From Pocillopora damicornis (taxonomy: Eukaryota), in the NCBI RefSeq assembly GCF_003704095.1, contig NW_020844421.1:1-64000 (forward strand): a stretch of DNA of 64,000 nt, given 5' to 3'. The translations under genes were made by a program, and so were the position numbers. This document shows, piece after piece, positions 39,701-58,900 of this stretch. A model generated the notes under the pieces. That model was not told the origin of the DNA, did not search any database, and saw nothing but the letters and a program-made list of their open reading frames with translations. Position 1 is the stretch's first letter, and each line of letters starts with the position of its first letter.

Positions 39701-42700
39701 GTGTCAGCCTCGCAGTCGACTGCTGCAGAGGAAGTGAAAACAAATTCTCAAGACAAAGACGAAACACACATCAGTGAAACTGAAGAAAAGGAAAAACTGA
39801 TAACGGATGATGACGAGGTTTATCCTGATACCAATGAAAGCACAAAACTTTACCATCATTCTCCACCTGATCAAAGGCAAGGAGGCAATATTTCTGCTCA
39901 TCCTGAGGTTCTTGTTCAAGAAACTGAGGATGTGTACACAGAAGAAGTTGGTGATGGCTTCGGTTGCTTTATAGGGGCACCTTCTGCAGCAAGTACTCCT
40001 CTTGCTGCCGCAAGTTCACTTCGTTTTGATTATGATAATGTTGACGATGGTGATGGTAATGATGATGATGATGATGATGTGAGTGTTGGTATTCTAGATA
40101 ATCCAAAACAATATCCGAAGGATGAAACTATGGATATTTTAACTAATGTTAAGTCGCAGCTAGCAAATTTGCCTAAATCAGATTCACAATTTCCAGTTGA
40201 CTTGTCGTACACACAGCCAGAATCTCCAACGATTCCAAGCCGTACGCGTTCTCTGCAACAAGACATGAACCTGACTGCTGATTGCTCAGTGTCGCTTTTA
40301 CCTCATGGACTCAAGGCCGAAGAGAAATCTGAGAAACAAGAATGCAAACCCAATTTTGATTCTAAATTGGTTGAGGACAATGTTAAAACAGAAATCGAGA
40401 ATGAACAAATGGAAAAACAACCTCCACCAATGAAAGCTGCAAGCACTTGCAAAAGCAAATCAACCAAACAGACAACTTTGGACACAAACTTTTTCAGCAC
40501 GAAAGGAGCTTTGAGCAAAAATGATTTTACCTCTGGGAAGAGAAAGAGGGACACTTCAGGGGAATTTTATGATCAAAAGTCCCATGGAAAAAATGAAGAT
40601 TTTAGGGTTAGTTAATTATTTACTTTTACGTTCAGTGTTTCAGTTAAAGTCTTTTTCCGTCAAAACTAAGACAAACTTTTCACTTTTGGCGAATTTATGA
40701 TTGTGTCGTTTAATCTAGTTTGACGATTTTACGCATTAAGTAGCGAAACAGCGCAAGGCCATGGTGCAATTATTGAGAGTTTATTGAAAACTGGTGAAGA
40801 TTCAAGTCTTCGTTGTAAGATTTTGTACTTAATATTTGCAAGTTGCTTAAAATTTTGAACGAACACAGTGCGACACGCTTTGCGCAGGTATAAAAAAAAA
40901 ACACTTATGACGTAATTTTCGGTCAAAAAGGAACGGACAGTAGTCTAAGGATGAAGAAAATTAGCACGGATTAGTAAGTATAACTTTGACAGATTCATTA
41001 TTTTTTTGGAACCATGTATTTGTTAGGGGGAAAAATTTAAGACTTTGTTCAAAGTACCTACGGCACCACCGCCAAAAACACCCGAAGTGATTCTACTGGA
41101 GGAATTTCCTTCACGCAGAGCTGATAAGAAGTCTTTTACCACTCCGTTGGGTAGCAGTGGAGATATCACAGGGCTGTACACGAGTGGTATGGACCTTTTT
41201 GGTAATATGGATGAATGCTGCTCATCAGGTAATCACCAGAATTGAAGAAAATTGCTTTCTTAAGCGCTCTGCGATTTGTTTAGAGCTCGCGCCGCTTTTG
41301 CAACCAATCAAATGCAGGACCGAACCAATCGTGACTTGGTCTCACGAATCGTTTCACCCGGGCTTGGACATGATCATGTAATTCTTCTTAGATTCTTCAC
41401 GGGCTTGTTGTTGCATTTGCATTGCTTTCAACCTCTTCGTCGATTGTGTCGAATCTGAAACTAATTTCAATGTACGAGTAGTGGCTGAATTTTAGGTGTT
41501 CTCAGTTTTCTTTAGTTATTATTTTTGCTGCATGTGTATCTTTTCATCGTTAGATGTGCAACAGGACAGTGAAAAAGAAGGTCTTTGCTTGGAGAACGAC
41601 GGAAAAGAAAATTTTACAGGCAAAAATGAGGTACTGACTGAGCTAATAGTTTGGCTATACGCACTTTCACCAAAGTGTTAAATAACAAGTTACCTTTTTT
41701 TCTTATAAACAGAAATATAGCAGTAAGGCTTCGCAAGAAAACAGGCCGAAAGATACGAATGAGTGTTCAAAAATGGGAGTCAGGTATTTGGTATTTGAAT
41801 TTATCAATTCCATCCAGTAGTTGAGCTAACGAGACATATACAGGTGTTTTGATAAGCTTTTTTCCATGGGGCATTAGGCGGCTGTACCCGGGAGAGGTCC
41901 GTAAGTCGAAACCTAAACACGAGTTTGCTCGTATGCTAAACGGACGGCGGTGAGAGGAGTAATGGGCAGCGGTAGACCGCTGTAAATCAGCTCTTTATGA
42001 AACTTACCCCTGCATACGAGATATGCCATGATGCTGATTCGTATAGCTACCGGAACTTCCTCCCCTCGGATGAGATGCTAGTCTATACTGGGTTACCCGT
42101 GGTCTCCGTGAGGGTTTGCAGTTAGCATAGGTAACAACATGATTTTGAGTGCAATTTGGTGTAAATAAAGACGAAAAAATTGTACGAGACCGTAGGGCGA
42201 GTGCAATTTGTGCAAATTTTACAAGTGTTTATTACACCAAATTGCTCGAGAATTCATTTTATGAGTTTTTAATAATGCACATGAAAGATCATCGCAGAAA
42301 GTCAAGACCGACGAAATTTTGAAAGCGTGCGCGCACTATTTGTAATTTGCACCCGTGTTACAACTTTGTAATCGTATTACAAATTTGCACGCGTGTTACA
42401 TGAGAATGCACTCGTTTTCAACCAATCAGAAGCGCCTTACTTTTTCATGTACATTATTACGGAATTTACAGGTAGGCGGGAAAAAGCCCTCTGAGTGTTA
42501 GCCTACGTGTAGCCGCACCCTTCCTCCCCAAAGGTGAAACAGAGGCGCCTACATTTTACCTTTGGGGGAAGGGTGCGGCTACACGTAGGCCCTCTGAGGG
42601 TAAGTTGTGTACAAGTGACGAAATGATCCTCGAGGGTGAGCTGCAACTGATAAACTGCGGAAAAAGTGGCTTTAACCCTTTATATAAAGGGTTAAATATT

Positions 42701-43955
42701 TCATATTCTCCATACCCCTCTCTATATGTTTCTACCGATACTGACAAGGAGAATTGATATGAAGATCAAAACCTCCAAGGCAGCGATCATTTCCTTTATT
42801 CTCATAATTTTAATGAATGGTTGAGCAGTATTACTGTGAGGAGAACTTAGATGCCGGTTACTCTTAGGGTTTAGCCCTTTAACTCCCATGAGTGACCAAG
42901 ATAGAATTTCTCCTTACAATATCAAACAGATAAGTGATGAGAATAGAGAAAAATATCAATTTGGGAGTGATTAATTGATCCAATACTAAATTCTCTGAAC
43001 TAACATTACATGAATTGCATGGTTGATAGTAAGGAGAATTTCAAATTTGATCTGGTAGATAAAGGGTTAAAGGGTCAAGAGATTTAGGCCTCGACGAGAT
43101 TCGAGCCCATGACTTCTAGGTACTAGTTCATTTGAGCAGCAAGGCCACATTTTGAAAGTGAGGCAAATTTTTGAGAATTCTTTGCTCCCATAAAGGAATG
43201 CTCCTCTTGAATTTGTCTTTCTTCCGACATATGGCTTTTTAGCTCAGTTAAAAATATTGTATTAAACGCGTACATCAATATTATTATTGCTAACGCTGGT
43301 GAATCATTCCCTCCTAAATTTGACTAGGAATAATGACGCTGAACCAAATTATAAATACGTAGAAGTTGTCCGGAAGAAAGATGAAAGAGCCAAGCTAAAC
43401 GGCTATAAATGTCGTGACTGCCAAGAGGTAACATGCCAGATTACTTAGACAGAAAAAAATAGTCCACTGAGTGAAAAAGTGAACTAAGACATTCCATGCT
43501 GGAATTTGGCCCAAAAGGCACTAAGTACAGGAAAACTTAGGCACGAAGAATACAGGAATTTTAAAGGCTTTTGAAGCGAACAAAACATACTAAAGAAGCA
43601 AGGCAGATCTTTTCATCGGTTTTTTTTTGTGGAAGTAATTTCTTCCTTGTATAGGGGGAATATGCATCATCAAGAACCTGTAGATTACTAAATAAGTTTA
43701 AAGTTAATAGTGTTTTAAATGGTATTAAAAAATGGTATTTAAATGGTTTAAAAGGAAGACCTTATTCCTGTTTTCTCGTCACCATATTCCTACCAATAAC
43801 GTAGCTCCACTTTCTGCATATAAACCCACACACAACTCACAATTCCTCCAATCGCTCTGACGAAGGGCTAACCCTCAAAATGTCAGGTTTTTTACCCTTT
43901 ACGGTGGCCAATTTACGTTTTCAACTCAATTGTTAACACTAAATTACCTGCTATA

Positions 43956-43998
<43 letters not shown>

Positions 43999-44661
43999 AC
44001 CTTTAGACCTAATCGCTGACGAGAGGTCATGAAAGAATGTCTGTTTTGGTTTAAGCCTTATAAAAGTTGGAACATGTGACCTGTTTTTCTCTCATTTTTG
44101 TTTAGTTTGAGAGCAATAGATAAAAATCAATTCAGCCGTTGGCGAAATTTATTCCCTTGTTTTTGTCCTTTTTTTAGGATTTGTATTGTATTGGCTAATA
44201 TGATGTTCTTCACGATGGGCGACTTTTTTTCAGTCTGTGCGTCAAAGTTTCGGTGTTACGTAACGAGTCAGTTAGAGTTGAGAAATGTTAAGCCGATTGT
44301 TGACAGTGGTCTCTCGAGTTCTCTTTTACATATTTAGATTATTTCATCTGTTTTGCAAATGTGATAAATTAGGTTTGCTATTGTGATTGCCAATCGAAAT
44401 GCGCTCAAAGACAGATATCCCTTTTCTTTTCAGTACTACCAGGGCCTTGATCTTCCCGAAGATGAGCTGAAAAAACGTTTGAAGCACTGTTCTCGTCACC
44501 GAGCGAAGTTTTCACCACCACCGTCCACTCCGCCAGGCTTTTGGAATTTAAGCTTTCCGGATACCCAAGAGTATATGGCTAAGGGCTATTTAAAGACTGA
44601 GTCGGAAGCACCGGCTCCGAAGAGACTTCGGAAAACACGACGGAATAGGATCGCAAAGTGA
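36702..44661 (+). CDS. RBBP8: DNA endonuclease RBBP8/CtIP (Sae2 family), ~11 exons
   Basis: N-terminal MESYSLLEKLKETIKRDFQ|DL (tetramerisation-like) and coiled coil (exons ~37553-37658, ~38086-38148, ~38463-38536, 38854-38929). Large acidic exon 39589-40606, then exons ~41027-41228, ~41554-41630, ~41713-41783. C-terminal YVEVVRKKDERAKLNGYKCRDCQE (43328-43427)|YY...CSRHR...STPPGFWNLSFPDTQ (44434-44661) carries the CxxC, RHR, CDK TP and TQ sites. The exact start is uncertain. Confidence 0.93.
38191..38395 (-). mobile_element. CMITE-type MITE (reverse orientation)
   Basis: ttaaccctttaactcccaagatctc...cttggtcactcatgggagtaaa. Confidence 0.85.
39138..39555. mobile_element. CMITE-type MITE (39138-39353) sharing a TTAA with an adjacent second-subfamily MITE
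   Basis: ...gggagtttaaggg-TTAA-tcctctacaccctaacat... Confidence 0.7.
42501..42590. mobile_element. Palindromic MITE-like hairpin
   Basis: gcctacgtgtagccgcacccttcc / ggaagggtgcggctacacgtaggc, with gccctctgag repeated on both flanks. Confidence 0.8.
42672..43075. mobile_element. Nested CMITE-type MITE cluster in a CtIP intron
   Basis: TTAA-ccctttatataaaggg-TTAA mini-palindrome, a second-subfamily body, then a full copy at 42871-43070. Confidence 0.75.
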
Positions 44662-45548
44662 AGTGTCTTTTCGAAGATTAACGATGAATTGCGAAGTTGA
44701 CATGAAGATGTCACGATCGCTGATTGCTCGGGTTATCCGTGTGGTAACGAAGAAAACCGATTGGTGGAAGATGATACGAGGCATAATACAAATATAGAAC
44801 TGTATTGTGAACAAGCCTCATGCATTTATACTAGAATGTACTGCTTGTCAATTTTTTTTCTTAAGTGTGTACATGTCGAGAAATATTACGAGGAGCCAAT
44901 GGGAACTCACTACAAGAAAACATGCCTGCCGCGCGGAAAAATGCGATTGAGCAAGTCGTCATTGGTTTAAGTTTTGAATCCATTTGCTTTTTAAAGTGGC
45001 GCGAGTTTCCTAGACCAATCTCCTATTCAGAGCAATCTCGGATAAATTTCAACACTTTTCTCTAGAGTGTATTTCGATCGAGCGTCATAAAACCGAAGTC
45101 AACGTAATCACAACGACCTATCTGACGAAAAAAATATCGCTTAGGGCAAATGGGAACCCAAATAGCAGAAGATTGTCCCCTCAGTTCAAAAAAGTCTGCT
45201 ATGAGAAATAATAATGACTGTTTATGAAAATCCTTCCGTAAATCAAGATGTAATTTACTGATCCACGAGTGTAATTTCAGAAATTCCAACATGCGTTCTA
45301 AAACCATCCTGATTTGAACTAAATTATTTTGAATCAAATGCTTCCCAATCACCTTTCTCGTTCCACTCCCTGTCTTGCAAGAGACGACGGAGAAAATTCC
45401 TTGGGGACCTGAATCCAAATGGATTTGCATTTTCAGCGCCATTTTTGAAGCGAACAGGATCAACACGAATAGCTCACTTGCCCTTGCAGTTCATTCCTGC
45501 ATTTAGCAGAAGGGCGATTTAAAGAAGCGTTAATTGTCCTTCCTTGCC
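43610..45548 (+). repeat. Segmental duplication copy A (CtIP last intron part, terminal exon, 3' region and TPX2-like promoter)
   Basis: 43610-43745 and 44005-44057 match 50900-51095. 44897-45548 matches 51196-51849. Confidence 0.9.
43845..44003 (+). mobile_element. Penelope-like-derived repeat with a degenerate hammerhead motif, present in duplication copy A only
   Basis: GCT-CTGACGA-AGGGCTAACCCTC-AAAAT-GTC-AGG at 43854-43887, then ...cccaccgacgcagcaccacagtttctttagaaacttacc. Confidence 0.7.
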
Positions 45549-47474
45549 CATATGACAGTGATTGCGTTTGTCCTTGAGAACTATATTGAATACGCGACAA
45601 ATACGAGCAAAAAATATTTTTACACATTCAAAATAAATCGATTAACATTTACCTATGGCGAAAGAAAAAAGAATTGGCCTAACTTTTATGGAATGTGCGG
45701 CTAACATCCGCCAATTTCCGCTGCTTTAACCGAAAATGAAATATTCGAAATTCATTGAAAATGAAGCTACCACAATGCAACGCAATCGGAGTGCGCACAT
45801 CTTTTTTAAGAGCGATTTTGCCGCAATTCAGCATTGAGTTCCTGCTCTCTTGGAAAGGCCTTTGGATAGTTCAAGGCATTGTTTGTACATGCAAGTGTTT
45901 TCCAGTGTTGGATAGCGGTTTTGTACATGTCTAAGGTGAGTGAATGAGGCGAAGATCGACTTTGCAGTCTTGGGAACGTGCAGACTGACTGCACTTCAAC
46001 AGGAAGTCTAGTTGGTCTTTTCGCTTATGACTGCGTTTCTCGTTTTGGTCACGAAACATCTTGCTCGGGAATTCGAAAGTTCAGAGAGCTCATCTCTCGT
46101 AATCTTTCAAAGAACGTCTAATCAAACATTTCAAAGTTGTGGATAAGGGCTTTGATCAACTTTTATAGGTATTTGTTTTCGATCACAGCTGTACCTAGTT
46201 ATAAACATAAATAAACATCTACGTACTAGTCGCCGGTTCGATGCGGTTGTAGTATTTTGGAATGTTTCTTAAGCTTTTCGCGGTATTCATGACCAGGAGA
46301 CAGTTTAATTTGCGAAAGGAAGCAAGATTGCTGGGAACATATTCCAACGTAATCGACGAAAAAAGTTCATTTGCAGCCATTTATAGTAACATAAACAACG
46401 GAGCTATTTTCTCGTCCATACATGTATCATGTATGAGCATCATGTCTTAGCGCAACATAGAGCCAGGGGTGTTGTAATTAATTATGAGCAATCATAGCAT
46501 GATTGTTTAACCTCTTATACCCTAACATCAGTCAGCATATTCTCCATTCTGTTCTTCATACATTTCTTGAGGTCGTGACGAGGAGAATTTCTCGAGCAAT
46601 CAAGAGTTTCTTTAGCTGGCGATCATTTCCTCCATTCTCATGAACTTACTGTTTTATTTGGGGGTGATACTGTAAGGAGAATCTAGACGCTAGTCACTCT
46701 TAGAGGTTACAACATGATTCTGCCTTTCTTCTTTTAATACCATGAAAGGTTTTAGGAATAAACTTTTTGATTCAAACAACAGGTGCTGGAAGAGCAATTT
46801 TATAGATAAAATTTAGAAGATCTCATACAATGTGAAGAGGGGCATATCATTCCTATGAGTTTTAAAGGATTTTTATGAAAGTATCAATGGACTTAACATA
46901 TGACTCGCTGCTTTGGAATTTATTTTCCATTGTCCTACTTTCAAACTATGGTCAGTCCAATAAGGAGTCTTAAAGCAATATAAGGGGATTTTAGTCTTTT
47001 TGTGTAGGAGGAGAGAGTAATATCTTGGATATGAATTCAAACTATATCGACAGAAACAGAAGTTTTCTGGTATGATTTTAGTTTTTGATGAGTTATGTGC
47101 TTTTGGTTCATTTTTGAGTTGTCTGATTGTCAAGCTGTTAATAAGTGTTTCTAGAAGAAAGGGTGTATTATGGTGCAAAATTCTTTCATGCAAGGCTGAC
47201 TGAAATATTTCTAAACAGGAAACTCTTTCTTCTTTGTAATGTTTAATTTACAGTCTTTTGTTTTTGATATTCCTAAGACATAGACTAGTATAGTTATTTT
47301 GAGATGTCTTGATATTGGTGTTGTGTTAACATTTTGTAGCCTCCTTTTGTGTGATGTATGATATTTGTAACAAGTTCGTGTCTTACTGTTTATTATTTCA
47401 TTGCAGGATACTCATGGTATTAAGCATCAAAAAATTTCTGTAAAACCGCTGTGTGTGCATTAGCGTTATCAATT

Positions 47475-50018
47475 ATGCCGATTCAAAAACCTCAAGGAAC
47501 AGAATTTCTTCAGTGTCCAATATGTTACAAGGAATTTGACAATCATGATCGGCAGCCAATCAGCTTGGGATGTGGACACACATTTTGTGTTTCCTGCTTG
47601 TCAAAACTGTCTAAAACACAGTGCCCTACTGATCAGGCTCCTGTAGAGACAGATATATCCAAACTTCCATACAACTTTGCTTTGCTTCAATTAGTTGGAG
47701 AAGAAATGCCAGACAATAGGCTTCCCCCAATTGACAGTCTTAGAGAATATGCCACTTATTATTTAAATTCAAAAGGCTGTATTGAAAAGCTTGCCCTGTT
47801 CTTGAAACCTGTCAGTGGCTCTGGTAATGGTACAGTGAATGGAAAAGTCAATGGCAGCACCCGTAATGGTTCTGTCAACAGCAATGGGAATAACGTCCTT
47901 ACGAGACCCATGCAGAGGAAGCTTGTGACATTAGTTAACTGTCAATTGGCTGAGGGTGAAGGAAGATCTAGAGCCATGCGTGCAGCCAGAAGCTTGGGAG
48001 AAAGGACAGTTACAGAGCTCATTTTATTGCATCAACAAGTCTCAGCTAATATATGGGCTGCTGTACGGAATCGTGGTTGTCAGTTTTTAGGACCAGCTAT
48101 GCAGGAAGAAGCTTTGAAACTGATTTTGTTGGCTCTTGAGGGTGGTGAGGCTTTGTCTAGAAAGGTTTTGGTTCTTTTTGTGGTCCAGAAGCTGGAATCT
48201 GTGTTTCCACAGGCTTCCAAAACAAGTATTGGCCATGTAGTGCAGTTGCTTTACAGAGCATCCTGTTTTAAGGTGAGTTTATGCTTTATGCTCCATTAAG
48301 GTGGTTTTCAGTGGATGTCTGTTAAATTGTCACTAAAAAGTGCTCTGAGATTTTTGTTATGTAGGAAATTGAGTATGCTTGTAATATATATTGAATGTAA
48401 TTAAGAGGTCTCTGTGTATTTAAAAGTATTGAACTGCAAATGTTGACTCAATTTTTTCATTCAGGTCGAGGAAAAGAACAATGAGCCATCTCTAATGCAG
48501 CTCAAAGAACAGGTACTGTTTCTTTGAAAAATTTAATAAGTGTTTTCAGATGTAACTGCCATTAAATTCACATGTTGGTTATTTTTTTCCATTGAATAAA
48601 CAGTGGTTAATAATTGTGTTGGTTGTGCTTTTTAGACTTAAAAACATTATATCATTCTTTTTTTTTTCTTTTTTTTTTGCTATCAGTACCGTACTTATGA
48701 TGCACTGCGGAAAGTACATGATGCACAGATAGTGCAAATTGCAACAGAGGCAGGGCTGCGCATTCTCCCAGACAAGTGGTCCTCACTGCTCTACGGTGAC
48801 ATGGATCACAAGTCTCACATGCAATCTATCATTGACAAGGTGTGTTGTTAGTTATGGCTTCAGCTTTAATGAAGTAAAACTGTACATTTAATACAATGGA
48901 TCTAAGCTAGTTTGAAATTTTTGATATCACTATTCAAGATTTAAAGCAGCAGGGCTATTATTGTATTTCTATCATGGGAAGACCTGTGAATTTTTTAATG
49001 GAGTGTTATGGTTTGCATCACAAGTTTATCCCAAAAAATGGTAGCATTACAGTTAAAACTAATTTCTTTTATTTTGTTTTCAGCTCCAAACCCCTGCCTC
49101 ATTCTCCCAGAGCATCCAAGAGCTGATCATTGCCCTACAGAGATCTGGCGATCCTGGGAATCTCTGTCAAATGAGAGATCAGTTTGAATTACTGTCCCAC
49201 ATTGATGCATCTCCAGGTTTGTGTGGCAGTCTTTTTTGCAAGAATGGCAAGTTGTTGCTTACAGAAGCACACAAATTTTCATTGACTGAAGCTTGAATAA
49301 GTTCTTGACATTAGTGGCCTGTTTTCACCAAGTTGTTCACTATAGCTTTGGGATCATATACATGTAGACACCCCAGTTGCACAGTTAATTACAGGTACAT
49401 GTACTTCAAGGTCAAAAACAATTGCATTACCAGTTGAGATAACATGTGTCTTTGATTTTTTTTCCTGCAGAGGCATCATGTCCAGCTTGGGATGAGCTAG
49501 AACAAGCCATGGTTTCTGTACATTCTGTGGTCCATGGATTTGTTAATTTTTCAAAAGTGAGTGGTGGTGTTTTTGTTTTTCAAAATAAAATCCACTGATT
49601 TCTTGATTTGAGTCTATTTTGATTACATGGAAACTACACGAGAGCTCTTTTGGCAGATGCAGGATGATCACTGTGATCAATGTTGCTTTTGGTTCTATTC
49701 TTTCATATTCAAAAGGTTAATTTGAAACATCTGCAGGCTCATTGATATAAAAGAGCAGATTAAAAAAAAGAAAAAAAAACTAGATGCATGCAGAAGCATC
49801 AAGAGCAGCTGTTGAACATTTAAGGGTCTCCTTTGTTTAACAGACAAGTCTTGCATTTCCAAAAGTTTATCATAACCATTGGTAACAGTTTAGTAATTTT
49901 AAAAGTACTGAGTAGTCTAAAGGATGGATTATGTTTTTCCTTTATTTTGATGATATCAGTCACATGGCAGAGGAATGAAAGGATCTGGTGATCCACCACA
50001 AGTAAGTACAATTTGAAG

Positions 50019-50058
<40 letters not shown>

Positions 50059-50867
50059 AAATTTCTTTAATTTCCAGTGATCTTGATTTAGTCTAGCTAA
50101 CTGTAGTCTTATTTGTGCGTCAGTTCAGGCAGGTGTACAGGTAAACTTGGTCTAGATTGTCCTTAAGAGTCAAGTAATAAGCCTATTATTTACATTGGTT
50201 CTTTTCGGGACAGTAGCAATTTTTTTCCTTTTCTTTTTTAGTCACACAACAACAAGTTCAAAACCAGTATGTGCAGGGATCACACTTGGGGGGGATGTCC
50301 AAGAGGTCCCCACTGTACATTTGCTCACTCAAAGGAGGAGCTAGAGAAGTGGGTGTTGATCTGATTCTTTGCTTTAAAGTTTGCAAATTAATGTTTTTCA
50401 TGCTAAGCTATTCTCAGGTCCAAATACTAATGTGTGTTTTTTTTGTTGCATTATCCTAAAGTCTAATTTCCAAATCCTACAATAAATATTTGGACATGAA
50501 TCACAAATGACCTCTTACTAACTAGTATTATCAGCCATGTCCCAAATTCAAGTTTCCTTCTATGATCATGGGCTGTTTATTATGTCTTGGAAAAATGATA
50601 ATAAATACTGATCTAAACATGATTTTTTTCAACGACCAGGGTTTGAGCATTAATCCTTGTTCTTCATTAACGCGCATCACTTTTAATCGCAGGTTTGGTA
50701 AAAGAAGAGCTCAGAGGCCTCGGCCCTCACCCATTGGTAGAGGACCAGTACCATCTGTGGCACCAGATCAGTTTTCACCCCTTGAAAATGGTTGTGATGG
50801 CAGTCCAACAGCTACCCAGGCTCCTACAAATTGTGTCAACGGCTCTGCAAGATCATCTCCTCTTTAA
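47475..50867 (+). CDS. RC3H1: Roquin (RC3H family), C-terminally truncated: RING + ROQ/HEPN + CCCH, ~513 aa, 8 coding exons
   Basis: Exons 47475-48272, 48465-48512, 48687-48839, 49084-49216, 49471-49556, 49960-50001, 50242-50348 and 50693-50867 splice in phase. Motifs: [16 protein letters not shown]...CPTD; [15 protein letters not shown]; [17 protein letters not shown]; [21 protein letters not shown]; [19 protein letters not shown]; KFKTSMCRD...CPRG..CTFAHS. A probable 5' non-coding exon ends ~46168. The symbol denotes the family only. Confidence 0.92.
50018..50058. repeat. (GTT)n microsatellite in a Roquin intron
   Basis: About 13 uninterrupted GTT units. Confidence 0.95.
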
Positions 50868-50899
50868 ATTTCTCCTGGTAAGGAGAGATGAAAATTTTT

Positions 50900-51849
50900 G
50901 TTCATCGGTTTTTTTGGTGAGGAAGTAATTGCTTCCGCGTATAGGGGGAATATGCATCTTCAAGAAACTGTAGATTACTAAATAAATTCGAAGTTAATAG
51001 TGTTTCAAATGATATTTCTTTTGACGGTAAAGATCTTCCTAAGGAGACCTAATCGCTGACGAGATGTCCTGAGAGAATGGCTGTTTTGGCTTAAGNNNNN
51101 NNNNNNNNNNNNNNNNNNNNNNNNNNNNNNNNNNNNNNNNNNNNNNNNNNNNNNNNNNNNNNNNNNNNNNNNNNNNNNNNNNNNNNNNNNNNNNNCAATA
51201 GGAACTCACTACAAGAAAACATGCCTGCAGCGAGGGAAAATACGATTTAGCAGGTGGCTACTGGTTTAAGTTTTGAATCCAATTGTTTTTAAAGTGACGT
51301 GAGTTTCCTAAAACAATCACTTATTCAGAGCAATCCCTAATTACTTTCGACATCTAATTGGAAATTTTTCTTTAGAATGTATTTCGATCGAGCGTCATTA
51401 AACTAAGGTCAACGTCAGATCACAACGACCAATCTGAAGAAAAAATATAACTAGGCAAATGGAACCCCAGTATAAGAGGACTGTCCCCTTCAACAAAATC
51501 TGCTATGAGGGCTAGAAATAACAACGACTGTTTATGAAACCCTTAGATGTAATTTACTGATCCATAAGTGTGATTTTCAGAAAACATGTGCTCTAAAAGC
51601 AATGATTTGAACTAAATTCTTCTTTACCGATTTTTTGGAACCCAGTACCAGTCACCTTTCTCGTTCCACTCCTTATCTTGCAGAGACGACGAAGAAAATT
51701 CCCTAGGGTCTGGACCCAAATAGATTAGCATTTTCAGCGCCATTTTTGAAGCGAACAGAATCAACATGAATAGTTCATTTGCTCTTGCAGTTTATTCCTG
51801 CATTTAGCGGAAGGGTGTGATAAAGACAAGTTAATTGTCCTTCCTAGCC
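50900..51849 (+). repeat. Segmental duplication copy B (interrupted by N gap 51096-51195)
   Basis: ttcatcggttttttt..ggaagtaatt...tatagggggaatatgcatc...; agacctaatcgctgacgaga; ggaactcactacaagaaaacatgcctgc; tcacctttctcgttccactcc...cagcgccatttttgaagcgaacag...ttaattgtccttcct all recur colinearly from copy A. Confidence 0.9.
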
Positions 51850-51857
51850 ACTGCTAG

Positions 51858-54800
51858 ATGGAAACTGATCCAAATTACGAGTTTGAAGCTCCAAAATGGG
51901 TCGACTTTACGGAAGATTTCGAAGATGAATTCAATGACTCGGGGTACGTTCAGTATTTTGCGAAAAGTTTGATTTGATGTTCTTAAAAATGGCATCGACT
52001 GATTGAATTGGTTACGATGTTGTTTGTAGATTTACTATATTAATTTTTTTTCCTTTGTATAACTTTTGTGTAATGCACAGAAATAATATATTTAAAACAT
52101 GAAATGTTTCGCTTTGCAGTCAGTAATGTATCGCCGTACGTTAATTTATATTGAAGCTTAAATATTTTGTAACTTTTAACGTCACTTCTTCATTGAATTT
52201 TTCTCAATACAGGAAGTTAGTGTAGGAAAACTTAAGCTTATCAGCTCTTCTTTTTGTTGCATCAATCGCGTTTTTGTTCTGATTTCTCAATGAAAGTTGA
52301 GCATTGCCATTATAATCACTTTCCTTTAACTCTCATTGCGGCAAAATGCATTATGTACAGAAATCTGCATGAAAGCTAAATGCCAAATATATGATGTTTT
52401 CAATTAAAAAAAATGAGATTTTAATGTTGTAGTTCCTAGGCTTAAACGCTTTCCAATGTGATGCAAACATTAGCAACATGTACATGTGTTTTGATTGGTC
52501 ATTAGTTATGATCTACTGGAGGACAGATGCATAGATAACGTCACTATTAACCCTTTAACTCCCAAGATCTCATTAGTAATTCTCCTTACTCTTTGCCATA
52601 TACTTCTTGTGATGTTAGTTTGGAGAATTTGGTATTGGATCAACTAATAATCCCTTAGCTAATATTTTTCTTTATTCTCATCACTCGTCTGCTTGATATT
52701 GTATTAACCCTTTAACTCCCAGAAGTGATTAACATGTCACTTCTCCCTATAATATCTATGCATTATCCAGCAAACAGGTAATGAGAATACTCAAACTCAT
52801 CAGGTAGGAGATATTACCTTGATTGAACACCAAATTCTCGTAACCAATTTACAAGAAAAAGTGTAGCAGCTAGAGGGGAGAATTACCAATCAGATCTTGG
52901 GAGTTAAAGGGTTAATATTGTAAGGAGAAATTCTGTCCTGGTCACTCATGTTGCCATGTGTCTGTTCAGGTATAGATAAAAGAAGATGATGAAATGTGGC
53001 GAGAACATCAGTGAAACATTCTGGTGCAGTTTGTATGCCACTGTTTTCATTCTTGCTTCATTATGACATCATCTCTGATCCATTACTGAACAGACACAAG
53101 GAAGCAACTTTTGAGTCTATTTGTGAAGCTGATTTTGTAACTGAATTTCTTCACAGTCTGAACAGTTCATGGTTTGAGAAAGTCCATCCACTTCATGAAC
53201 CAAAGGACCCATCACATCACGATGCAACTACCAAGCCACTACTTGCTGCTGCCCAAGTCGACAAGCCTGCCACAAGCTCAAAACCACAGCCCAATAAACT
53301 GAAGAAAAATTACAACAGCAAAAAGTCTCTTGGTATAAAGTCAATTCGAACACAACGTGGAGAACATGAGGGCATGAATAATAGAGAGAACAGTGGAAAA
53401 GTGCAAAGAGATGTGAAGTCATCAACAGCTAAAAAAGATGAAAAGAAGACCACACAAAGAAGTAGTTCTGAGGAGGGGAATTTAACTCCTGAAAGATTAA
53501 GACATCACAAACAGTGCAGTTTTACACCACCATGGACAAACTCCCCTCATAACAGACCAGGTAAAGATACCTCTCACTAACTGAGTTCAAGGTCCGTACT
53601 GTACATGTAAGTTACTGACCAGGTTTTATCTGTTTGGATTTTTGGCATGTGTGAAAAATGCAAGGGCCATTAATCTGAGCAGGAAAAAGCAAGGTTCTGT
53701 AACTTACAGTATGGACTAAGAAAATGAGTTTATATTTGTAATATTATTATATTTCCAGGTTCAAATAGAGGGAAAAGATTTTAATTCAAAGAAACTTTTG
53801 AATTGTATAGAGAACAGTCTGTGGAATATGTATACCAATGTCAGGATGGAACTGGTTAAAATTTCTTTTTTTTACATTTCAGAAAATGCATCACATGCTA
53901 ATAAGAAAGATGATAGAAGCAGTAGCCTGAACAACATGGCTGTCTTTTCTCCCCAACGTGTGCCTACTAATCAGTCCCCAATGTCTCCTGCACCAGTGCA
54001 AAGTGTTAAAAGGTCTTACACAGAATATGCTTCTTCACCAAAGACATCTCTGCTATCAAAGGCTGTCAGTGGATATCAGAAAGGAAATCAACCTGGAAGG
54101 AAAAGAAGACTGTTGCCTGCCATTCCCAGTATAAACAAGAATAGTCCAGGTAGTATTTGTACAAGTCCTGCATCACCTACTCAGCCGCATTATCAAATTG
54201 AAGGCAAAGAGGGCAAAATGAATGATCAAATGTTCTCCAAAGAGGCTGCTTGTAGTGTTTCTAACATGCCTCTTCGAGCAGTAGATTTGTCACAAGCCGC
54301 AAGTCAAGATCACTCTCTAGGACACCTTCAGAGTAACAATACTATTAAAAGAGAATTTCAGGACAAAAATATGTTCAGCCAAAGACCTTTAGAAGCAATA
54401 CATGAAAACAGTGCAAGCAAAGAAAAACCAAGCCAGCCCCTCGCACAAACAGATGGTGAAAAGAATGCATCCTCAAAGCATAAAATGGTAACACAATCTC
54501 ATGATGTTAGTCTGGAAGCACTGTTAAAACAACACAACAAGAAAATTGCAGCTGCAAGGAATAAGTATGATGAAAATGGCCGCAAAATCAGAACTGCAGA
54601 GCCAAACTTTTGTCCTGCACCAGGCCACAAGTCCATATCTTCATCATCCACAGTATTGTCACCATCTGCTGCTTGCAAGAGGCCCACAACAGCTGTGGAA
54701 CCTGTGGTTGGTGTGAAGCAGAAGCGCCGCTCTTGTGTTGCTGCTGTGAGCAGCACACAAAGTGAAAAAGCTACATTTAAGACAAACTCATCATCATCAA

Positions 54801-54964
54801 ACATAAATAGGAAGGGCAAGGAGGATGTTTGTAAACAAACAGTAAAGCAGAAACGTCGTTCATGTGTTGCTACATTTGGAAATAGTGGAAATGCAAAGTT
54901 AGACAAAGAACTGCGAGATTTAATTGCCCAACATAATTCAAAAGTTAAGGCTAAGAGGTCTTAG
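51858..54964 (+). CDS. TPX2-like protein: N-terminal Aurora-A-binding-like motif plus a basic, disordered body (~523 aa, 3 exons)
   Basis: Exons 51858-51943, 53157-53560 and 53883-54964 join in phase. N-terminus METDPNYEFEAPKWVDFTEDFEDEFNDSG|LNSSWFEKVHP resembles the TPX2 YSYDAPSDFINF...DSWFEEK motif. Confidence 0.75.
52547..52950. mobile_element. Nested MITEs: inner element 52708-52911 with TTAA target duplication inside an outer CMITE
   Basis: The outer body is interrupted at ...gatattgta[TTAA ccctttaactccc...gggagttaaaggg TTAA]tattgtaaggag... Confidence 0.9.
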
Positions 54965-55925
54965 ATTTTTTTGTGTACAGAGCTCAAGTAATTTAAATTA
55001 AAGTTGTAGGAATGTGGGATTGTAAATGTACATATACTTGTCAGTCAATTATCAAATGATTTAGATTTGATACTGGAATGCAAATCAGCACAAGACCATT
55101 TTAAACAAAGTGGAAACAGGGTGCATTACAATTGGCAATGCTTGTTACAGGCATTTATCCAATCTGTCTTTCAACAACATGAAACTGAATTAAGAAGCTG
55201 TCCTTTATGTGCTCCTTGTAAAAGTTGGCAAATTTTTTGTAGGTTTGAGATTTAAAATAATATAACATTTTTCTTGTGGATTTTTCCCAAGATGTGGTAA
55301 TACTTCGGGAGAATTTTAACTTCAGGAGTTAAATACATGCATGTTTGACCAGATTTAACACTGGTTTGAGATAATTCTTTGTGATATAGAGGTAGCTCAG
55401 TTGTGAATGCACAATCTTAAATAAATATCTCATTATCCAAGATGTATCAGTACTCATAATCAATTAATTATTCACAATTTTTACCTCACAAAGATGTAAT
55501 CTTAAGCCTGAAAACAATCTTTTCTGTACAAAAAAAAGAATTTAAAAGAGTTTCTTGCAAACATAGGATTTACCCTGTGGAATGCATGACTGAGGAAAAA
55601 TAGTTGATTTTTGGAAATTTTTGGAAATTTTTGGAATACTGTTTTTCAAGACAAAGACATTCTGAATTTCGTTTCAATATCACCCAGTTTTGATCCACCT
55701 GAAAAACTGAGGTTGAAATGCCCAATAATTTTTAACAGATGCTGACTTTGTGCCAATTACGATGATCAGGATTTAAGACGATCTAAGATGAGTCACAGAC
55801 GATGCTGTTTTCTAGGTCAGCAGTTGCTTTTCGAAGTCCACACGACAACGAGGCCGCACCGCCATCTTAGAATTTCTCCAAGGTTTTTTCCAACTTACGG
55901 TTAAAGTTGAATAACTTTTGTGGAG

Positions 55926-58900
55926 ATGTCGTTACTGAATAAGAAAAAGAAGTCTTTTATTGGAGTACCTGCTCCTCTTGGCTACGTACCCGGTCTTGGA
56001 AGAGGGTTCGTATTTGAATATAATTTCTGAATTCGTGTACTAAAGGAATCAAAAGATGTCACGCATTTCATGCCAGTGAAGTAATTTTGTAACCGCTCTA
56101 AGCAACAATGTGCTTGAATTTCGCAGTGCTACTGGCTTTACGACCCGGTCAGATATCGGTCCTGCTAGGGATGCTACGGATATAAGGTGAGAATCTTGCC
56201 AAACTTATTCAGGTGCTTATAATATGAACATGATAATATGATCAACATGATGATTGCATGAACGACAATAAAAAGTTGTATATGATAAATTTGGGTATTC
56301 TCATTACTTTTTTGCTGGATAATGTAAGGATATTATAGGGAGAAATTACGTTTTAATCACTTCTGGGAGTTAAAGGGACAGCTGAAATATTATCAACCTG
56401 GATGGGGGAGTTCTTCCTTAACCCTGCGTGTCATGTGTTTGCCTCTCATTATATGTTGTAGATTAATACTCTCATTTGAATCAACAGCGATGAGAGGCAT
56501 GGAAAACCAGGCTTTGCAAATGAAAAGAAGCCTCAAGAGGAAGATGAAGAGGAAGATTTAAATGACACAAATTATGACGAGGTACATCAACATGGATATG
56601 CATAATTTTGTAATTTTTGTAGCTGGGTATAGTGCACTAGGGGTCACTATGTGGTGTTGTTTGGAAAGAACAGATGGAAATAATAACTAGACAAGTTGTG
56701 GGTCTGGACCCAGTTGTTTGAAGGCCGATTAGCACCAACCCAAGGTTAAATTTTAATATAGGTTTCTTTATTCTTTTATTCAAAAGCCTTTTTGGGTTAA
56801 TTTTCTGTGTTCTTTTAAGAGCATCCAAACAAAAAGAAATTTGACTGAAATTTTTTTTAAAGCTTTCAGATCTGAAATGAGATTTCACACTAACCCTGGA
56901 TTATCTTAACCCAGCTTTGAACAACCTGGCCCTGGCTAACTTTTTATCTGATCGTAAACCCTCATCAGCCTTTGTAATGGATCTAAAAAATCTGATTAAA
57001 AGTAAAATGTTGATTGTGATAACTGTGTAAAAGTTTGCAGGATATGGTGGAAGCTTGTTCTCAAGCTGTCCTTATGAGAAAGATGATGAAGAAGCAGATG
57101 CCATTTATGATTCCATTGATAGAAGAATGGATGATAGAAGAAAAGAGAGAAGGTATGATGTTCTACACAGAGATAAATTACTGTGTACAGCTTATATATT
57201 GTATGGGTGTTCTTACGGGATCCTCTGAATATAGGTGGTTAAATGTGAATTTTTTTTGGCTTCATTTTCATTTTAGAGAGAAACGTTTTAAGGAAGAGAT
57301 TGAGCAATATCGTCAGGAAAGGCCTAAGATTCAGCAGCAGTTTTCTGATCTCAAGGTATTAGTTTTTGGTGTCGTTTTTGAGTATGATGGCATGGTACAT
57401 TTTAATAATAGAATTGCTGTGGACATTCAAAGCAACCAATCAGAAATTGAATAACTACTTGTGTCTTTGTTTTCAGCGGAAACTGGGTGAGGTATCTGAA
57501 GATGACTGGTTGAGTATTCCAGAAGTTGGTGACTACAGAAACAAGAAGCAGAGAAATCCAAGGACAGAAAAGTGAGTTGATTATTACAGAATTCACCATA
57601 GAAAACTCTGTATAACTGTTTGTTAATGATTACAGTGCTCTATTCATTCTTTTTACATGGTTTTTTTTCTTTTGACAATTCTCCTGTAGATTTACTCCAG
57701 TTCCTGACAGTGTCCTGCACAGTGCACTGATAAGTGGCGAGAAAATAACAACTCTTGACTCACGGCAACAGGTAGTGGAGAGTGTAAAGCCAAATCAAAT
57801 TGTTTTTGCTGCAGCAGCATATTTATTTTATGTTATTGGAGTAAAAACTTTTATGTGCAAATAGATGCCAGCTTTCCATGAGTGTATTCAACTGATGGAT
57901 CTGATTCCATGATTTTTGCTTTTAAAAGATTATTTGGTACAAATGGAATAATTGTTGACTCACAATTCTCTTTCTTGTCACAACAAATCATCATCCTGAG
58001 TGCACCATAATTTCTCCTTTTTTTTTTTTTCAAGAAATTTGGTGGTTTCCAGACTCCTTTCCCTGGAGGTATCACACCTGGAGGAATGACAACAGGTTTT
58101 TCAACACCATCAGCAGATCTTGACTTGATCAAAATTGGAGAAGCTAGAAAATCACTTGTTGGTGTTAAGCTAGATCAGGTTTGTAACTGTTTGTGAGGTA
58201 TTTGTATGCNNNNNNNNNNNNNNNNNNNNNNNNNNNNNNNNNNNNNNNNNNNNNNNNNNNNNNNNNNNNNNNNNNNNNNNNNNNNNNNNNNNNNNNNNNN
58301 NNNNNNNNNAACTGCACACTTTCCTTAGGTTGGATAGCTGCTGCCCGATTGGAGGAAGTGACAGGCCGCATGCAAGCTGCACGAAACACAATCATGAAAG
58401 GGACAGAAGTTTGCTCAAAGAACGAAGATGTGTGGCTTGAGGCTATTCGTCTGCAGGTTTGTTTCTCTTTCCAAGTTTCAAGTTTCTACTCTTTGAAAGA
58501 TTAGGAAAAAGTTGAACAAAGGACCTCCCGACCCTACCAAAAGTACATTATCGTAGTATGGTCTTGTGTTTTGTGAGATAAGGATATTTTCTCGCGAGAA
58601 TCACTGAAAGTGCACATTTGAAAGAAATCCTGAACAACGACGGATGGCATAAGAGCATAGACTTGCGGCCAAATAACGTAGTTGGTAAAGGGCTTTTGTT
58701 TTGTAATGTTCTGCAGCATGTGTTTAGGAGGCCAAGGTAGAAAATTTGGGGAAGTTCTTGTCCTGATTATTTGTTACTACGTGCTAGCCTTTTTGAAACC
58801 CTATCTTGGTCTTGAAGAATCTATTCTTGATCTCATTTCATCTTACCTTGTTGCAAAACATTTTAACACTTGTGCAGCTTCTTGTCGAACAGCAGAGGGG

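What the first reader, a model, noticed from the sequence alone, without database searches (positions are those of the whole stretch)
47475..51195. Genome-encoded 'half Roquin' that may borrow a duplicated CtIP terminal exon and escape NMD
Seen: 8 intact in-phase exons encode RING-ROQ/HEPN-CCCH and stop at TAA 50865-50867 (~513 aa). The frame would continue ATT TCT CCT G into a good donor GTAAGG at 50878, only 10 nt after the stop. About 20 nt later the sequence switches to a copy of the CtIP last intron, and no Roquin C-terminal exons follow before the next gene. Known: animal Roquins are ~1000-1200 aa, with a C-terminal region that contributes to CCR4-NOT recruitment. In mammals MALT1 cleaves Roquin near residue 510, leaving an N-terminal RNA-binding fragment of this architecture. 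Stops <50-55 nt upstream of the last exon junction escape EJC-dependent NMD. Inference: the donor splices onto a CtIP terminal-exon copy hidden in the 51096-51195 gap, which supplies a 3' UTR and polyA. This would give a stable truncated Roquin that could act as a decoy or modulator of mRNA decay while keeping its E3 RING.
Basis: partly seen in the sequence, partly recalled or inferred. Interest (0 to 1): 0.8.

Follow-up and report, generated by a model that had tools for sequence, protein, structure and literature searches.

The report
Truncated Roquin paralogue in Pocillopora corals
This coral carries a second, half-length copy of the mRNA-decay regulator Roquin, made by copying only the first eight exons of the full gene next to the DNA-repair gene CtIP; it is intact, transcribed and conserved in sister species, but it is already annotated and how its transcript ends is still unknown.

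Summary
Eight GT-AG exons (47475-50867) give a 513-aa RING-HEPN/ROQ-CCCH protein that ends at TAA 50865-50867, 10 nt before an intact donor.

What it is:
- It is identical to RefSeq XP_027038423.1, roquin-1-like of Pocillopora damicornis. P. verrucosa has a 513-aa orthologue.
- It is a DNA-level partial duplicate of the full-length Roquin gene on contig C4335. Homology, introns included, runs over window 45807-50882 and stops 5 nt into intron 8.
- The parent and an outgroup coral read TAC where this copy reads TAA. The C-terminal exons exist only at the parent.
- The junction, the stop and the donor recur in three independent assemblies, so this is not a misassembly.

Is it functional?
- The copy evolves faster than its parent (lineage omega 0.53 against 0.105), with changes at invariant residues such as K259E in the ROQ RNA-binding site.
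- It has no frameshift or premature stop.
- PolyA RNA runs hold about the exonic share of its words.

The borrowed-CtIP-exon idea is only structurally plausible. In P. verrucosa a CtIP terminal-exon copy with an intact acceptor lies 612 nt downstream. An AATAAA at 50981 offers a simpler end. The NMD argument is unnecessary.

The scan noted the flanking duplication before, on this same stretch.

The parts
45807..47474 (+). Upstream part of the duplicated Roquin block (candidate promoter, 5' UTR and 5' intron), homologous to C4335 28314-25154
   Evidence: Local blastn, 83-87% identity; own-genome search. The TSS was not determined.
47475..48272 (+). Exon 1 (266 codons): RING finger, linker, HEPN-N and the start of ROQ
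   Evidence: 89% aa identity to the C4335 paralogue.
48465..48512 (+). Exon 2
48687..48839 (+). Exon 3 (ROQ_II)
49084..49216 (+). Exon 4
49471..49556 (+). Exon 5
49960..50001 (+). Exon 6
50242..50348 (+). Exon 7 (CCCH zinc finger)
50693..50867 (+). Exon 8 coding part, ending in TAA 50865-50867. The parent and the outgroup have TAC there.
50878..50883 (+). Retained exon-8 donor GTAAGG. Whether it is used is unknown.
   Evidence: conserved in P. verrucosa and two Tara scaffolds.
50868..50889 (+). 9-bp hairpin with the donor GT in its loop, created at the duplication breakpoint
   Evidence: -11.8 kcal/mol, z -2.1; 7 of 200 shuffles fold as well.
50883..50900 (.). Breakpoint filler between the end of Roquin homology (50882) and the start of CtIP-intron homology (50901)
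50901..51095 (+). Copy B, left part: duplicate of the CtIP last intron (43612-43726 and 44005-44055), 88-90% identical
50981..50986 (+). AATAAA, a candidate poly(A) signal 114 nt after the stop. Copy A has AATAAG at the same place. It is conserved in P. verrucosa.
51096..51195 (.). Assembly gap, not filled. The flanks are collinear but 1.7-2.0 kb apart on independent contigs.
   Evidence: coordinates only.
51196..51849 (+). Copy B, right part: duplicate of the CtIP 3' flank (44897-45548). It ends 9 nt before the ATG (51859) of the next gene.
43612..45548 (+). Copy A: the end of the CtIP last intron, the functional terminal exon (44434-44661) and the 3' flank
   Evidence: SAE2 Pfam hit on the orthologous ORF.
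43762..44005 (.). Interspersed repeat of about 244 bp, inserted in copy A only. It explains the shift in copy spacing from 7290 to 7040.
   Evidence: at least 40 copies at 91-94% identity.
45555..45800 (.). Interspersed repeat of about 245 bp, exactly between the end of copy A and the start of the Roquin block (left junction)
   Evidence: at least 38 copies at 71-83% identity.

Best explanation
The gene is a Pocillopora-lineage paralogue of Roquin.

Origin (shown): a DNA-level duplication copied only the promoter-proximal region and exons 1-8 of the full-length gene, which now lies on contig C4335. The copy landed just downstream of CtIP, together with a duplication of about 1.7 kb of the CtIP 3' region that now flanks the insert.

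Product (shown): a 513-aa protein with the RING, HEPN/ROQ and CCCH modules and no C-terminal effector region. A derived TAC-to-TAA change ends the frame 10 nt before the orphaned exon-8 donor.

Status (shown): the gene is transcribed. It is kept open by selection, though under relaxed constraint, and it is shared by at least P. damicornis, P. verrucosa and P. meandrina.

3' end (inferred): the 3' UTR and poly(A) site must come from CtIP-derived copy B. One route is the AATAAA at 50981 without splicing. The other is splicing of the 50878 donor onto a CtIP terminal-exon copy. I rate these about equal.

Function (inferred, about 0.35-0.4): the protein lacks the region that recruits CCR4-NOT. It would therefore occupy Roquin stem-loop targets or partners without triggering decay, as a built-in antagonist or modulator. 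Alternatively it acts mainly through its RING. The K259E and S264P changes in the ROQ A-site suggest weakened or shifted RNA binding.
For: - Gene model and domains. The model is identical to XP_027038423.1; there are 513-aa and 489-aa orthologues in P. verrucosa and P. meandrina.
- Parent: window 45807-50882 aligns to C4335 at 84-87% identity, introns included, and all eight splice sites match. The parent reads TAC and continues into exons 9-14. Those exons are single-copy in the assembly, and exons 9-11 are conserved after exon 8 in an outgroup coral.
- Tree: the short copy is sister to the parent (support 99/97), with the outgroup outside. Branch lengths are 0.13 against 0.024.
- Selection: paralogue dS is 0.166, matching the intron distance of 0.162. 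There are 22 indel events in 1744 intron bp against one in-frame indel in the CDS. Outgroup-polarised counts are 20 synonymous and 36 non-synonymous changes in the short copy (omega 0.53) against 14 and 5 in the parent (omega 0.105). Fisher p is 0.007; omega below 1 has p 0.018. Orthologue omega is 0.13-0.58.
- Not an artefact: the CDS, TAA, donor and junction are the same in P. verrucosa chromosome CM071751.1 and in two Tara metagenome scaffolds.
- Expression: 7 runs on record as RNA, from 3 studies (most of them polyA or oligo-dT libraries), plus 11 probable RNA runs, hold 0.23-0.32 of the sampled words. Words lying wholly inside exons make up at most about 0.37-0.40 of the stretch by my count. 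DNA-like runs hold 0.57-0.78.
- Function: N-terminal Roquin fragments are inactive in tethering assays, and the C-terminal regions recruit CCR4-NOT (PMC5303829). Y250A/K259A/R260A abolish RNA binding (PMC9371910). The 4TXA alignment places E269 at K259 and P274 at S264.
Against: - The TSS, the splice junctions and the 3' end are not seen directly, and expression rests on k-mer shares.
- Omega 0.53 is high. Changes hit residues invariant in 18 outgroups (W8G, F52T, a 3-aa deletion at the HEPN-N/ROQ border, K259E, S264P, E282V, Q302K by human numbering). That could also mean slow decay.
- No functional data exist for any cnidarian Roquin.
- The antagonist role is by analogy with vertebrate and fly fragments only.
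Confidence: 0.62

Rival explanations
1. One reading: the exon-8 donor at 50878 splices onto a duplicated CtIP terminal exon lying in the unread stretch. That exon serves only as 3' UTR and poly(A) site, and the stop 10 nt before the junction avoids EJC-dependent NMD.
For: - The donor is a good match to consensus (G at -1, GTAAG) and is conserved in four sequences.
- In P. verrucosa a homologue of the CtIP terminal exon lies 612 nt after the stop. It keeps AG and 16 of 20 pyrimidines at the acceptor. It is 95.2% identical to the functional exon against 84-86% in its flanks. An AATAAA follows 126 nt after it.
- Block homology to copy A 44005-44875 also lies between the gap flanks on two Tara scaffolds.
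Against: - No junction read was obtained.
- A canonical, conserved AATAAA lies only about 100 nt into the would-be intron.
- The donor GT sits in the loop of a -11.8 kcal/mol hairpin.
- The NMD escape is not required. With or without the TAA, the stop would lie in the last exon or within a few codons of the junction.
- The content of this genome's own gap is unknown.
Confidence: 0.45
2. Transcribed but decaying partial duplicate: an unprocessed pseudogene or relic whose open frame survives by chance and has no function of its own.
For: - Protein evolution is about five times faster than in the parent.
- There are substitutions at otherwise invariant RING and ROQ residues and a 3-aa deletion.
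- The effector half is missing.
- A similarly divergent, even shorter roquin-1-like model (358 aa, K259Q) exists in Oculina patagonica.
Against: - About 19 indel events would be expected in the CDS at the intron rate, summed over both lineages. One is seen, and it is in frame.
- There is no premature stop in four independent sequences from at least two species.
- Lineage omega is 0.53, below 1 at p 0.018. Orthologue omega is mostly 0.13-0.39.
- All eight splice-site pairs are kept.
Confidence: 0.13
3. Assembly artefact: the junction at 50880-50900 is chimeric and the real gene continues into normal C-terminal exons.
For: A 100-N gap lies 230 nt downstream, and the scaffold is from a fragmented draft assembly (4393 contigs).
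Against: - The junction lies inside a contig, not at the gap.
- Window 41000-51095 aligns without a break to the P. verrucosa chromosome at 96.3%. Windows 43946-51095 and 44804-51095 align to two independent Tara scaffolds.
- The C-terminal exons are single-copy, at C4335.
Confidence: 0.01

Closest known systems
Full-length Roquin (RC3H1/RC3H2; Drosophila Roquin; C. elegans RLE-1), here the parent gene on contig C4335
   Same: The order RING, HEPN-N, ROQ, HEPN-C, CCCH is the same. The first 453 residues of human Roquin-1 (PDB 4TXA) align at E 3.7e-185. The RNA-contact residues R219, K220, K239, Q247, Y250, R251 and S253 are kept.
   Different: It stops at residue 513 and lacks the whole low-complexity C-terminal region that recruits CCR4-NOT. 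K259E, S264P, W8G, F52T and a 3-aa deletion are derived in this copy. Invertebrates are described as having a single Roquin (PMC5303829); this genus has two.
MALT1 cleavage product of mammalian Roquin-1 (aa 1-510) and Roquin-2 (aa 1-509)
   Same: Almost the same architecture and end point: the folded N-terminal region without the effector tail (PMC10691344).
   Different: That fragment is made post-translationally, on signalling, from the full-length protein. This one is encoded as such by a separate gene, all the time, and has diverged in sequence. No link to a coral paracaspase was tested.
Partial or chimeric gene duplicates that recruit a 3' end from flanking DNA (as described for young genes in Drosophila and mammals; from general knowledge)
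   Same: Only the 5' part of the parent is copied, with its introns. A new stop and a new 3' UTR come from sequence at the insertion site.
   Different: The recruited 3' sequence is itself a duplicate of the neighbour's last intron, terminal exon and flank, made in the same rearrangement. The insert is therefore bracketed by a direct repeat of about 1.7 kb.

Membership tests
Roquin (RC3H) family | N-terminal RING finger | tested here: met
   Pfam zf-RING_5, zf-RING_UBOX and zf-RING_2 at residues 13-54. The Cys/His ligands align to 4TXA. F52T and W8G are derived.
Roquin (RC3H) family | ROQ domain flanked by HEPN lobes | tested here: met
   PF21206 at 5.8e-37 and PF18386 at 8.7e-29. Residues 93-418 align to the 4QIK and 4TXA chains.
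Roquin (RC3H) family | CCCH zinc finger after HEPN-C | tested here: met
   PF00642 at 23.9 bits against a cut-off of 20.5, in exon 7.
Roquin (RC3H) family | Full set of ROQ A-site RNA-contact residues (Y250, K259, R260 and others) | tested here: not met
   Y250 is kept and R260 is K, as in the parent. K259 is E and S264 is P in this copy only. K259A is part of the triple mutant that abolishes binding (PMC9371910). The effect of E alone was not measured.
Roquin (RC3H) family | C-terminal effector region that recruits CCR4-NOT | tested here: not met
   The frame ends at residue 513. The parent's exons 9-14 occur only on C4335.
NMD-immune transcript by the 50-55-nt rule | Stop codon less than 50-55 nt upstream of the last exon-exon junction | tested here: inconclusive
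   The TAA is 10 nt before a potential donor.
NMD-immune transcript by the 50-55-nt rule | EJC-dependent NMD operating in this organism | not tested
   No data were gathered on cnidarian NMD.
Partial (5') DNA-mediated gene duplicate | A parent locus with collinear exons and introns, and a defined breakpoint | tested here: met
   84-87% identity, introns included. Homology ends at 50882, 5 nt into intron 8.
Partial (5') DNA-mediated gene duplicate | The copy is younger than the parent lineage (nested in the tree) | tested here: met
   the short copy plus the parent form a clade (99/97) inside the corals, with P0154 outside. The outgroup locus has exons 9-11 after exon 8.

The most novel reading that the evidence does not exclude
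Pocillopora corals have evolved a constitutively encoded equivalent of the MALT1-cleaved Roquin fragment. It is an effector-less RING-ROQ-CCCH protein with a re-tuned RNA-binding site. It competes with full-length Roquin on stem-loop mRNAs or on partners, and so sets the level of Roquin-dependent mRNA decay, for example in stress or immune responses. Its mRNA is completed by splicing onto a duplicated terminal exon of the neighbouring CtIP gene.
Probability: 0.15. Interest if true: 0.65.

Novelty: new variant of a known kind. Interest (0 to 1): 0.42.

Why it matters
Roquin is described as a single-copy gene in invertebrates. Its N-terminal half is known in mammals only as the inactive product of signal-induced MALT1 cleavage.

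Here a coral genus keeps that half as a separate, selected and transcribed gene. That is a natural experiment on what the RNA-binding and E3 half does on its own. It could act as a decoy, a modulator or a ligase.

The locus is also a clean, datable example of a new gene made by partial duplication with capture of a neighbour's 3' end. Pocillopora is a main model for coral stress biology, and public RNA-seq could show quickly when the short and long forms are used.

The gene model itself is already in RefSeq. The new parts are its origin, the selection analysis and the altered RNA-contact residues.

Tried and rejected
There are therefore no junction, depth or 3'-end data. After that I sent no reference containing those places to any search tool. 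Local scripts that aligned whole window stretches to loci already fetched did include them.
- Transcript contigs could not be reached through the protein tools. The 90% cluster of the 513-aa protein holds only genome-derived members.
- Local BLASTP of the parent's C-terminal open frames against Roquin representatives of 700 aa or more gave nothing. These regions are too variable. Conservation was shown in an outgroup coral locus instead.
- The look-up of the Oculina patagonica 358-aa model found no record.
- A literature search for a dominant-negative effect of N-terminal Roquin found no primary source in the library. My memory of such a result in Leppek et al. 2013 is unverified and is not used as evidence.
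- The joined step was left out. The whole protein was searched only as the database entry P0265, which equals the model. Exons were joined only inside local scripts, for translation and dN/dS.
- The gap was not filled. On the Tara scaffolds and in P. verrucosa I used coordinates of homology blocks. In P. verrucosa, a different species, I also used feature-level summaries. No letters of that stretch were printed or taken over.
- Rejected: misassembly; a transposable-element origin for the flanking repeat, since only two copies exist in the genome; retroposition, since the introns are retained.
Full report
**Observation.** The window is scaffold C1056 of a 234-Mb assembly in 4393 contigs. Between 47475 and 50867 there are eight exons with GT-AG introns. 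They sum to 1542 nt and translate to 513 residues with one terminal TAA at 50865-50867. Pfam finds a RING finger, the Roquin ROQ domain and ROQ_II, and a CCCH finger. Ten nucleotides after the stop lies CTG|GTAAGG (donor G at 50878). From 50901 the sequence is a copy, 88-90% identical, of the CtIP last intron at 43612 onward. The N run follows at 51096-51195.

**Identity.** The spliced model is residue-for-residue identical to XP_027038423.1, 'roquin-1-like [Pocillopora damicornis]'. The same cluster holds XP_058954248.2 of P. verrucosa (513 aa, 98.4% identical) and a 489-aa P. meandrina model that ends at the same C-terminus. So the gene model is already in public annotation. Its origin and meaning are not described there.

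**Origin.** A second Roquin locus lies on contig C4335.
- Window 45807-50882 aligns to C4335 28314-21592 at 83-87% identity, introns and upstream DNA included. All eight exons and splice sites correspond.
- Homology ends at 50882, 5 nt into intron 8.
- Where the window has TAA, the C4335 copy has TAC. It reads on through the same donor into six further open exon-like frames.
- Those C-terminal frames occur only once in the assembly.
- Three of them are conserved, in order, downstream of exon 8 in an outgroup coral genome. That genome also has TAC at the stop position.
- A tree of exon-1 proteins puts the short copy as sister to the C4335 copy (support 99/97), with the outgroup coral outside both.

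The window gene is therefore a DNA-level duplicate of the 5' part of the ancestral full-length Roquin, and it arose in the Pocillopora lineage.

**The insertion site.**
- The duplicated CtIP segment (copy A 43612-45548, copy B 50901-51849) occurs only twice in the genome, so it is not a transposon.
- Copy A holds the functional CtIP terminal exon (44434-44661). Copy B abuts the start codon of the next gene (51859).
- A 244-bp interspersed repeat entered copy A later (43762-44005).
- Another repeat (45555-45800) sits exactly at the left junction.
- The earlier scan note s1-780560 describes the same flanking duplication. I confirm it.

**Not an artefact.** The P. verrucosa chromosome CM071751.1 aligns without a break to window 41000-51095 at 96.3%. 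Two independent Tara Pacific metagenome scaffolds do the same across the junction. All three carry an intact 1542-nt CDS, the same TAA and the same donor.

**The gap.** I did not fill it or read its letters. By coordinates only, the two flanks are collinear on those three contigs but 1.7-2.0 kb apart. The first 560-870 bp after the left flank form a block homologous (84-88%) to copy A from 44005 onward: to 44875 on P. verrucosa and one Tara scaffold, and to 44593 on the other.

In P. verrucosa, a different species, I looked at features only.
- A homologue of the CtIP terminal exon lies 612 nt after the short-Roquin stop.
- It keeps the AG acceptor and 16 of 20 upstream pyrimidines.
- It is 95.2% identical to the functional exon, against 84-86% in its flanks.
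- It carries an internal stop at codon 37.
- An AATAAA follows it.

It does not show what lies in this genome's gap, or that the exon is spliced.

**Selection.**
- Between the paralogues, dS is 0.166 and dN is 0.041. The intron distance is 0.162.
- The introns show 22 indel events in 1744 aligned bp. At that rate about 19 would be expected in the CDS. One is seen, and it is 9 nt and in frame.
- With the outgroup coral, changes polarise to 20 synonymous and 36 non-synonymous in the short copy (omega 0.53), against 14 and 5 in the parent (omega 0.105). The difference has Fisher p 0.007. Omega below 1 in the short copy has p 0.018.
- Among Pocillopora orthologues, omega is 0.13-0.58, on few changes.

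The gene is under relaxed but real constraint.

**What changed in the protein.** Against 18 animal Roquins, 18 differences are derived in the short copy and 5 in the parent. Alignment to human Roquin-1 (PDB 4TXA, native numbering) gives window residue = human + 10 in the ROQ domain. The short copy has:
- W8G and F52T in the RING region;
- a 3-residue deletion at the HEPN-N/ROQ border;
- K259E and S264P in the ROQ A-site;
- E282V and Q302K.

Y250, K220, K239, Q247 and R251 are kept. The Y250A/K259A/R260A mutant abolishes RNA binding (PMC9371910). RNA binding may therefore be weakened or re-tuned. This is inference.

**Expression.** Seven runs on record as RNA, from three studies (most of them polyA or oligo-dT libraries), and eleven more probable RNA runs hold 0.23-0.32 of the sampled 31-mers of 47475-51095. 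Words lying wholly inside exons make up at most about 0.37-0.40 of the stretch, by my count. DNA-like runs hold 0.57-0.78. At about 90% identity the paralogue would share only about 4% of words. This indicates spliced transcripts of this copy. Junctions and the 3' end were therefore not seen.

**How the transcript ends.** This is unresolved. Whatever the route, the 3' UTR and poly(A) site derive from CtIP-derived copy B.
- Route 1: no splicing, and use of AATAAA at 50981. This hexamer is conserved in P. verrucosa, and copy A has AATAAG at the same place. A 9-bp hairpin (50868-50889, -11.8 kcal/mol, z -2.1) that holds the donor GT in its loop might favour this route.

I rate them about equal. 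The NMD argument is unnecessary. Without the TAA, the unspliced frame would stop at TGA 50886-50888. A spliced frame would enter the CtIP exon out of phase and stop after about five codons, judging from copy A as proxy.

[quoted passage not shown] N-terminal fragments are inactive when tethered. Invertebrates are said to have one Roquin (PMC5303829). MALT1 cleavage yields Roquin-1 aa 1-510 (PMC10691344). By analogy, the short coral protein should not trigger decay. The most likely role is a competitor or modulator of the full-length protein, or a RING-dependent role (about 0.35-0.4). A slowly decaying relic remains possible (about 0.13).

**Verdict.** This is a real, conserved, transcribed, truncated Roquin paralogue whose origin is now clear. 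The exon-borrowing and NMD parts of the interpretation are unproven. It is a new variant of a known family, of moderate interest.

Noticed in passing
window 43762-44005: An interspersed repeat of about 244 bp, with at least 40 genomic copies at 91-94% identity (a young SINE- or MITE-like family). It is inserted in the CtIP last intron after the local duplication.
   Followed up: partly
window 45555-45800: An older interspersed repeat of about 245 bp (at least 38 copies at 71-83% identity). It lies exactly between the end of copy A and the start of the Roquin block. It may have taken part in the rearrangement or landed there later.
   Followed up: partly
window 42871-43092, 52526-52920, 56283-56377: MITE-like elements sharing a CCCTTTAACTCCC terminal motif, in direct and inverted orientation around the locus.
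   Followed up: no
window 50868-50889: A 9-bp hairpin formed across the duplication breakpoint, with the orphaned donor GT in its tetraloop. It is conserved in P. verrucosa. The parent sequence cannot form it.
   Followed up: partly
P0169 (Oculina patagonica roquin-1-like, 358 aa); also P0170, P0163: Other scleractinians have divergent, long-branch Roquin exon-1 copies. The Oculina model stops inside exon 4 and has K259Q. Short or divergent Roquin duplicates may have arisen more than once in corals.
   Followed up: partly
window 51859-54965: The next gene starts 9 nt after copy B ends, so its promoter lies in the duplicated CtIP 3' flank. It has a 523-aa orthologue in P. verrucosa with no Pfam hit.
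   Followed up: no
L025:13993-14220 (P. verrucosa): The second CtIP terminal-exon copy is much better conserved than its flanks (95% against 85%), with 7 of its 11 differences at third codon positions, yet it has an internal stop. Gene conversion or constraint as part of a transcript could explain this.
   Followed up: partly
window 50018-50058: A (GTT)n microsatellite in intron 6 of the short Roquin.
   Followed up: no
L026 and L027 (outgroup coral, ERZ25067556): Two contigs carry identical Roquin exon-1 products. Their intron lengths agree for the first three introns and differ from intron 5 onward. They are probably haplotigs rather than a second duplication.
   Followed up: no
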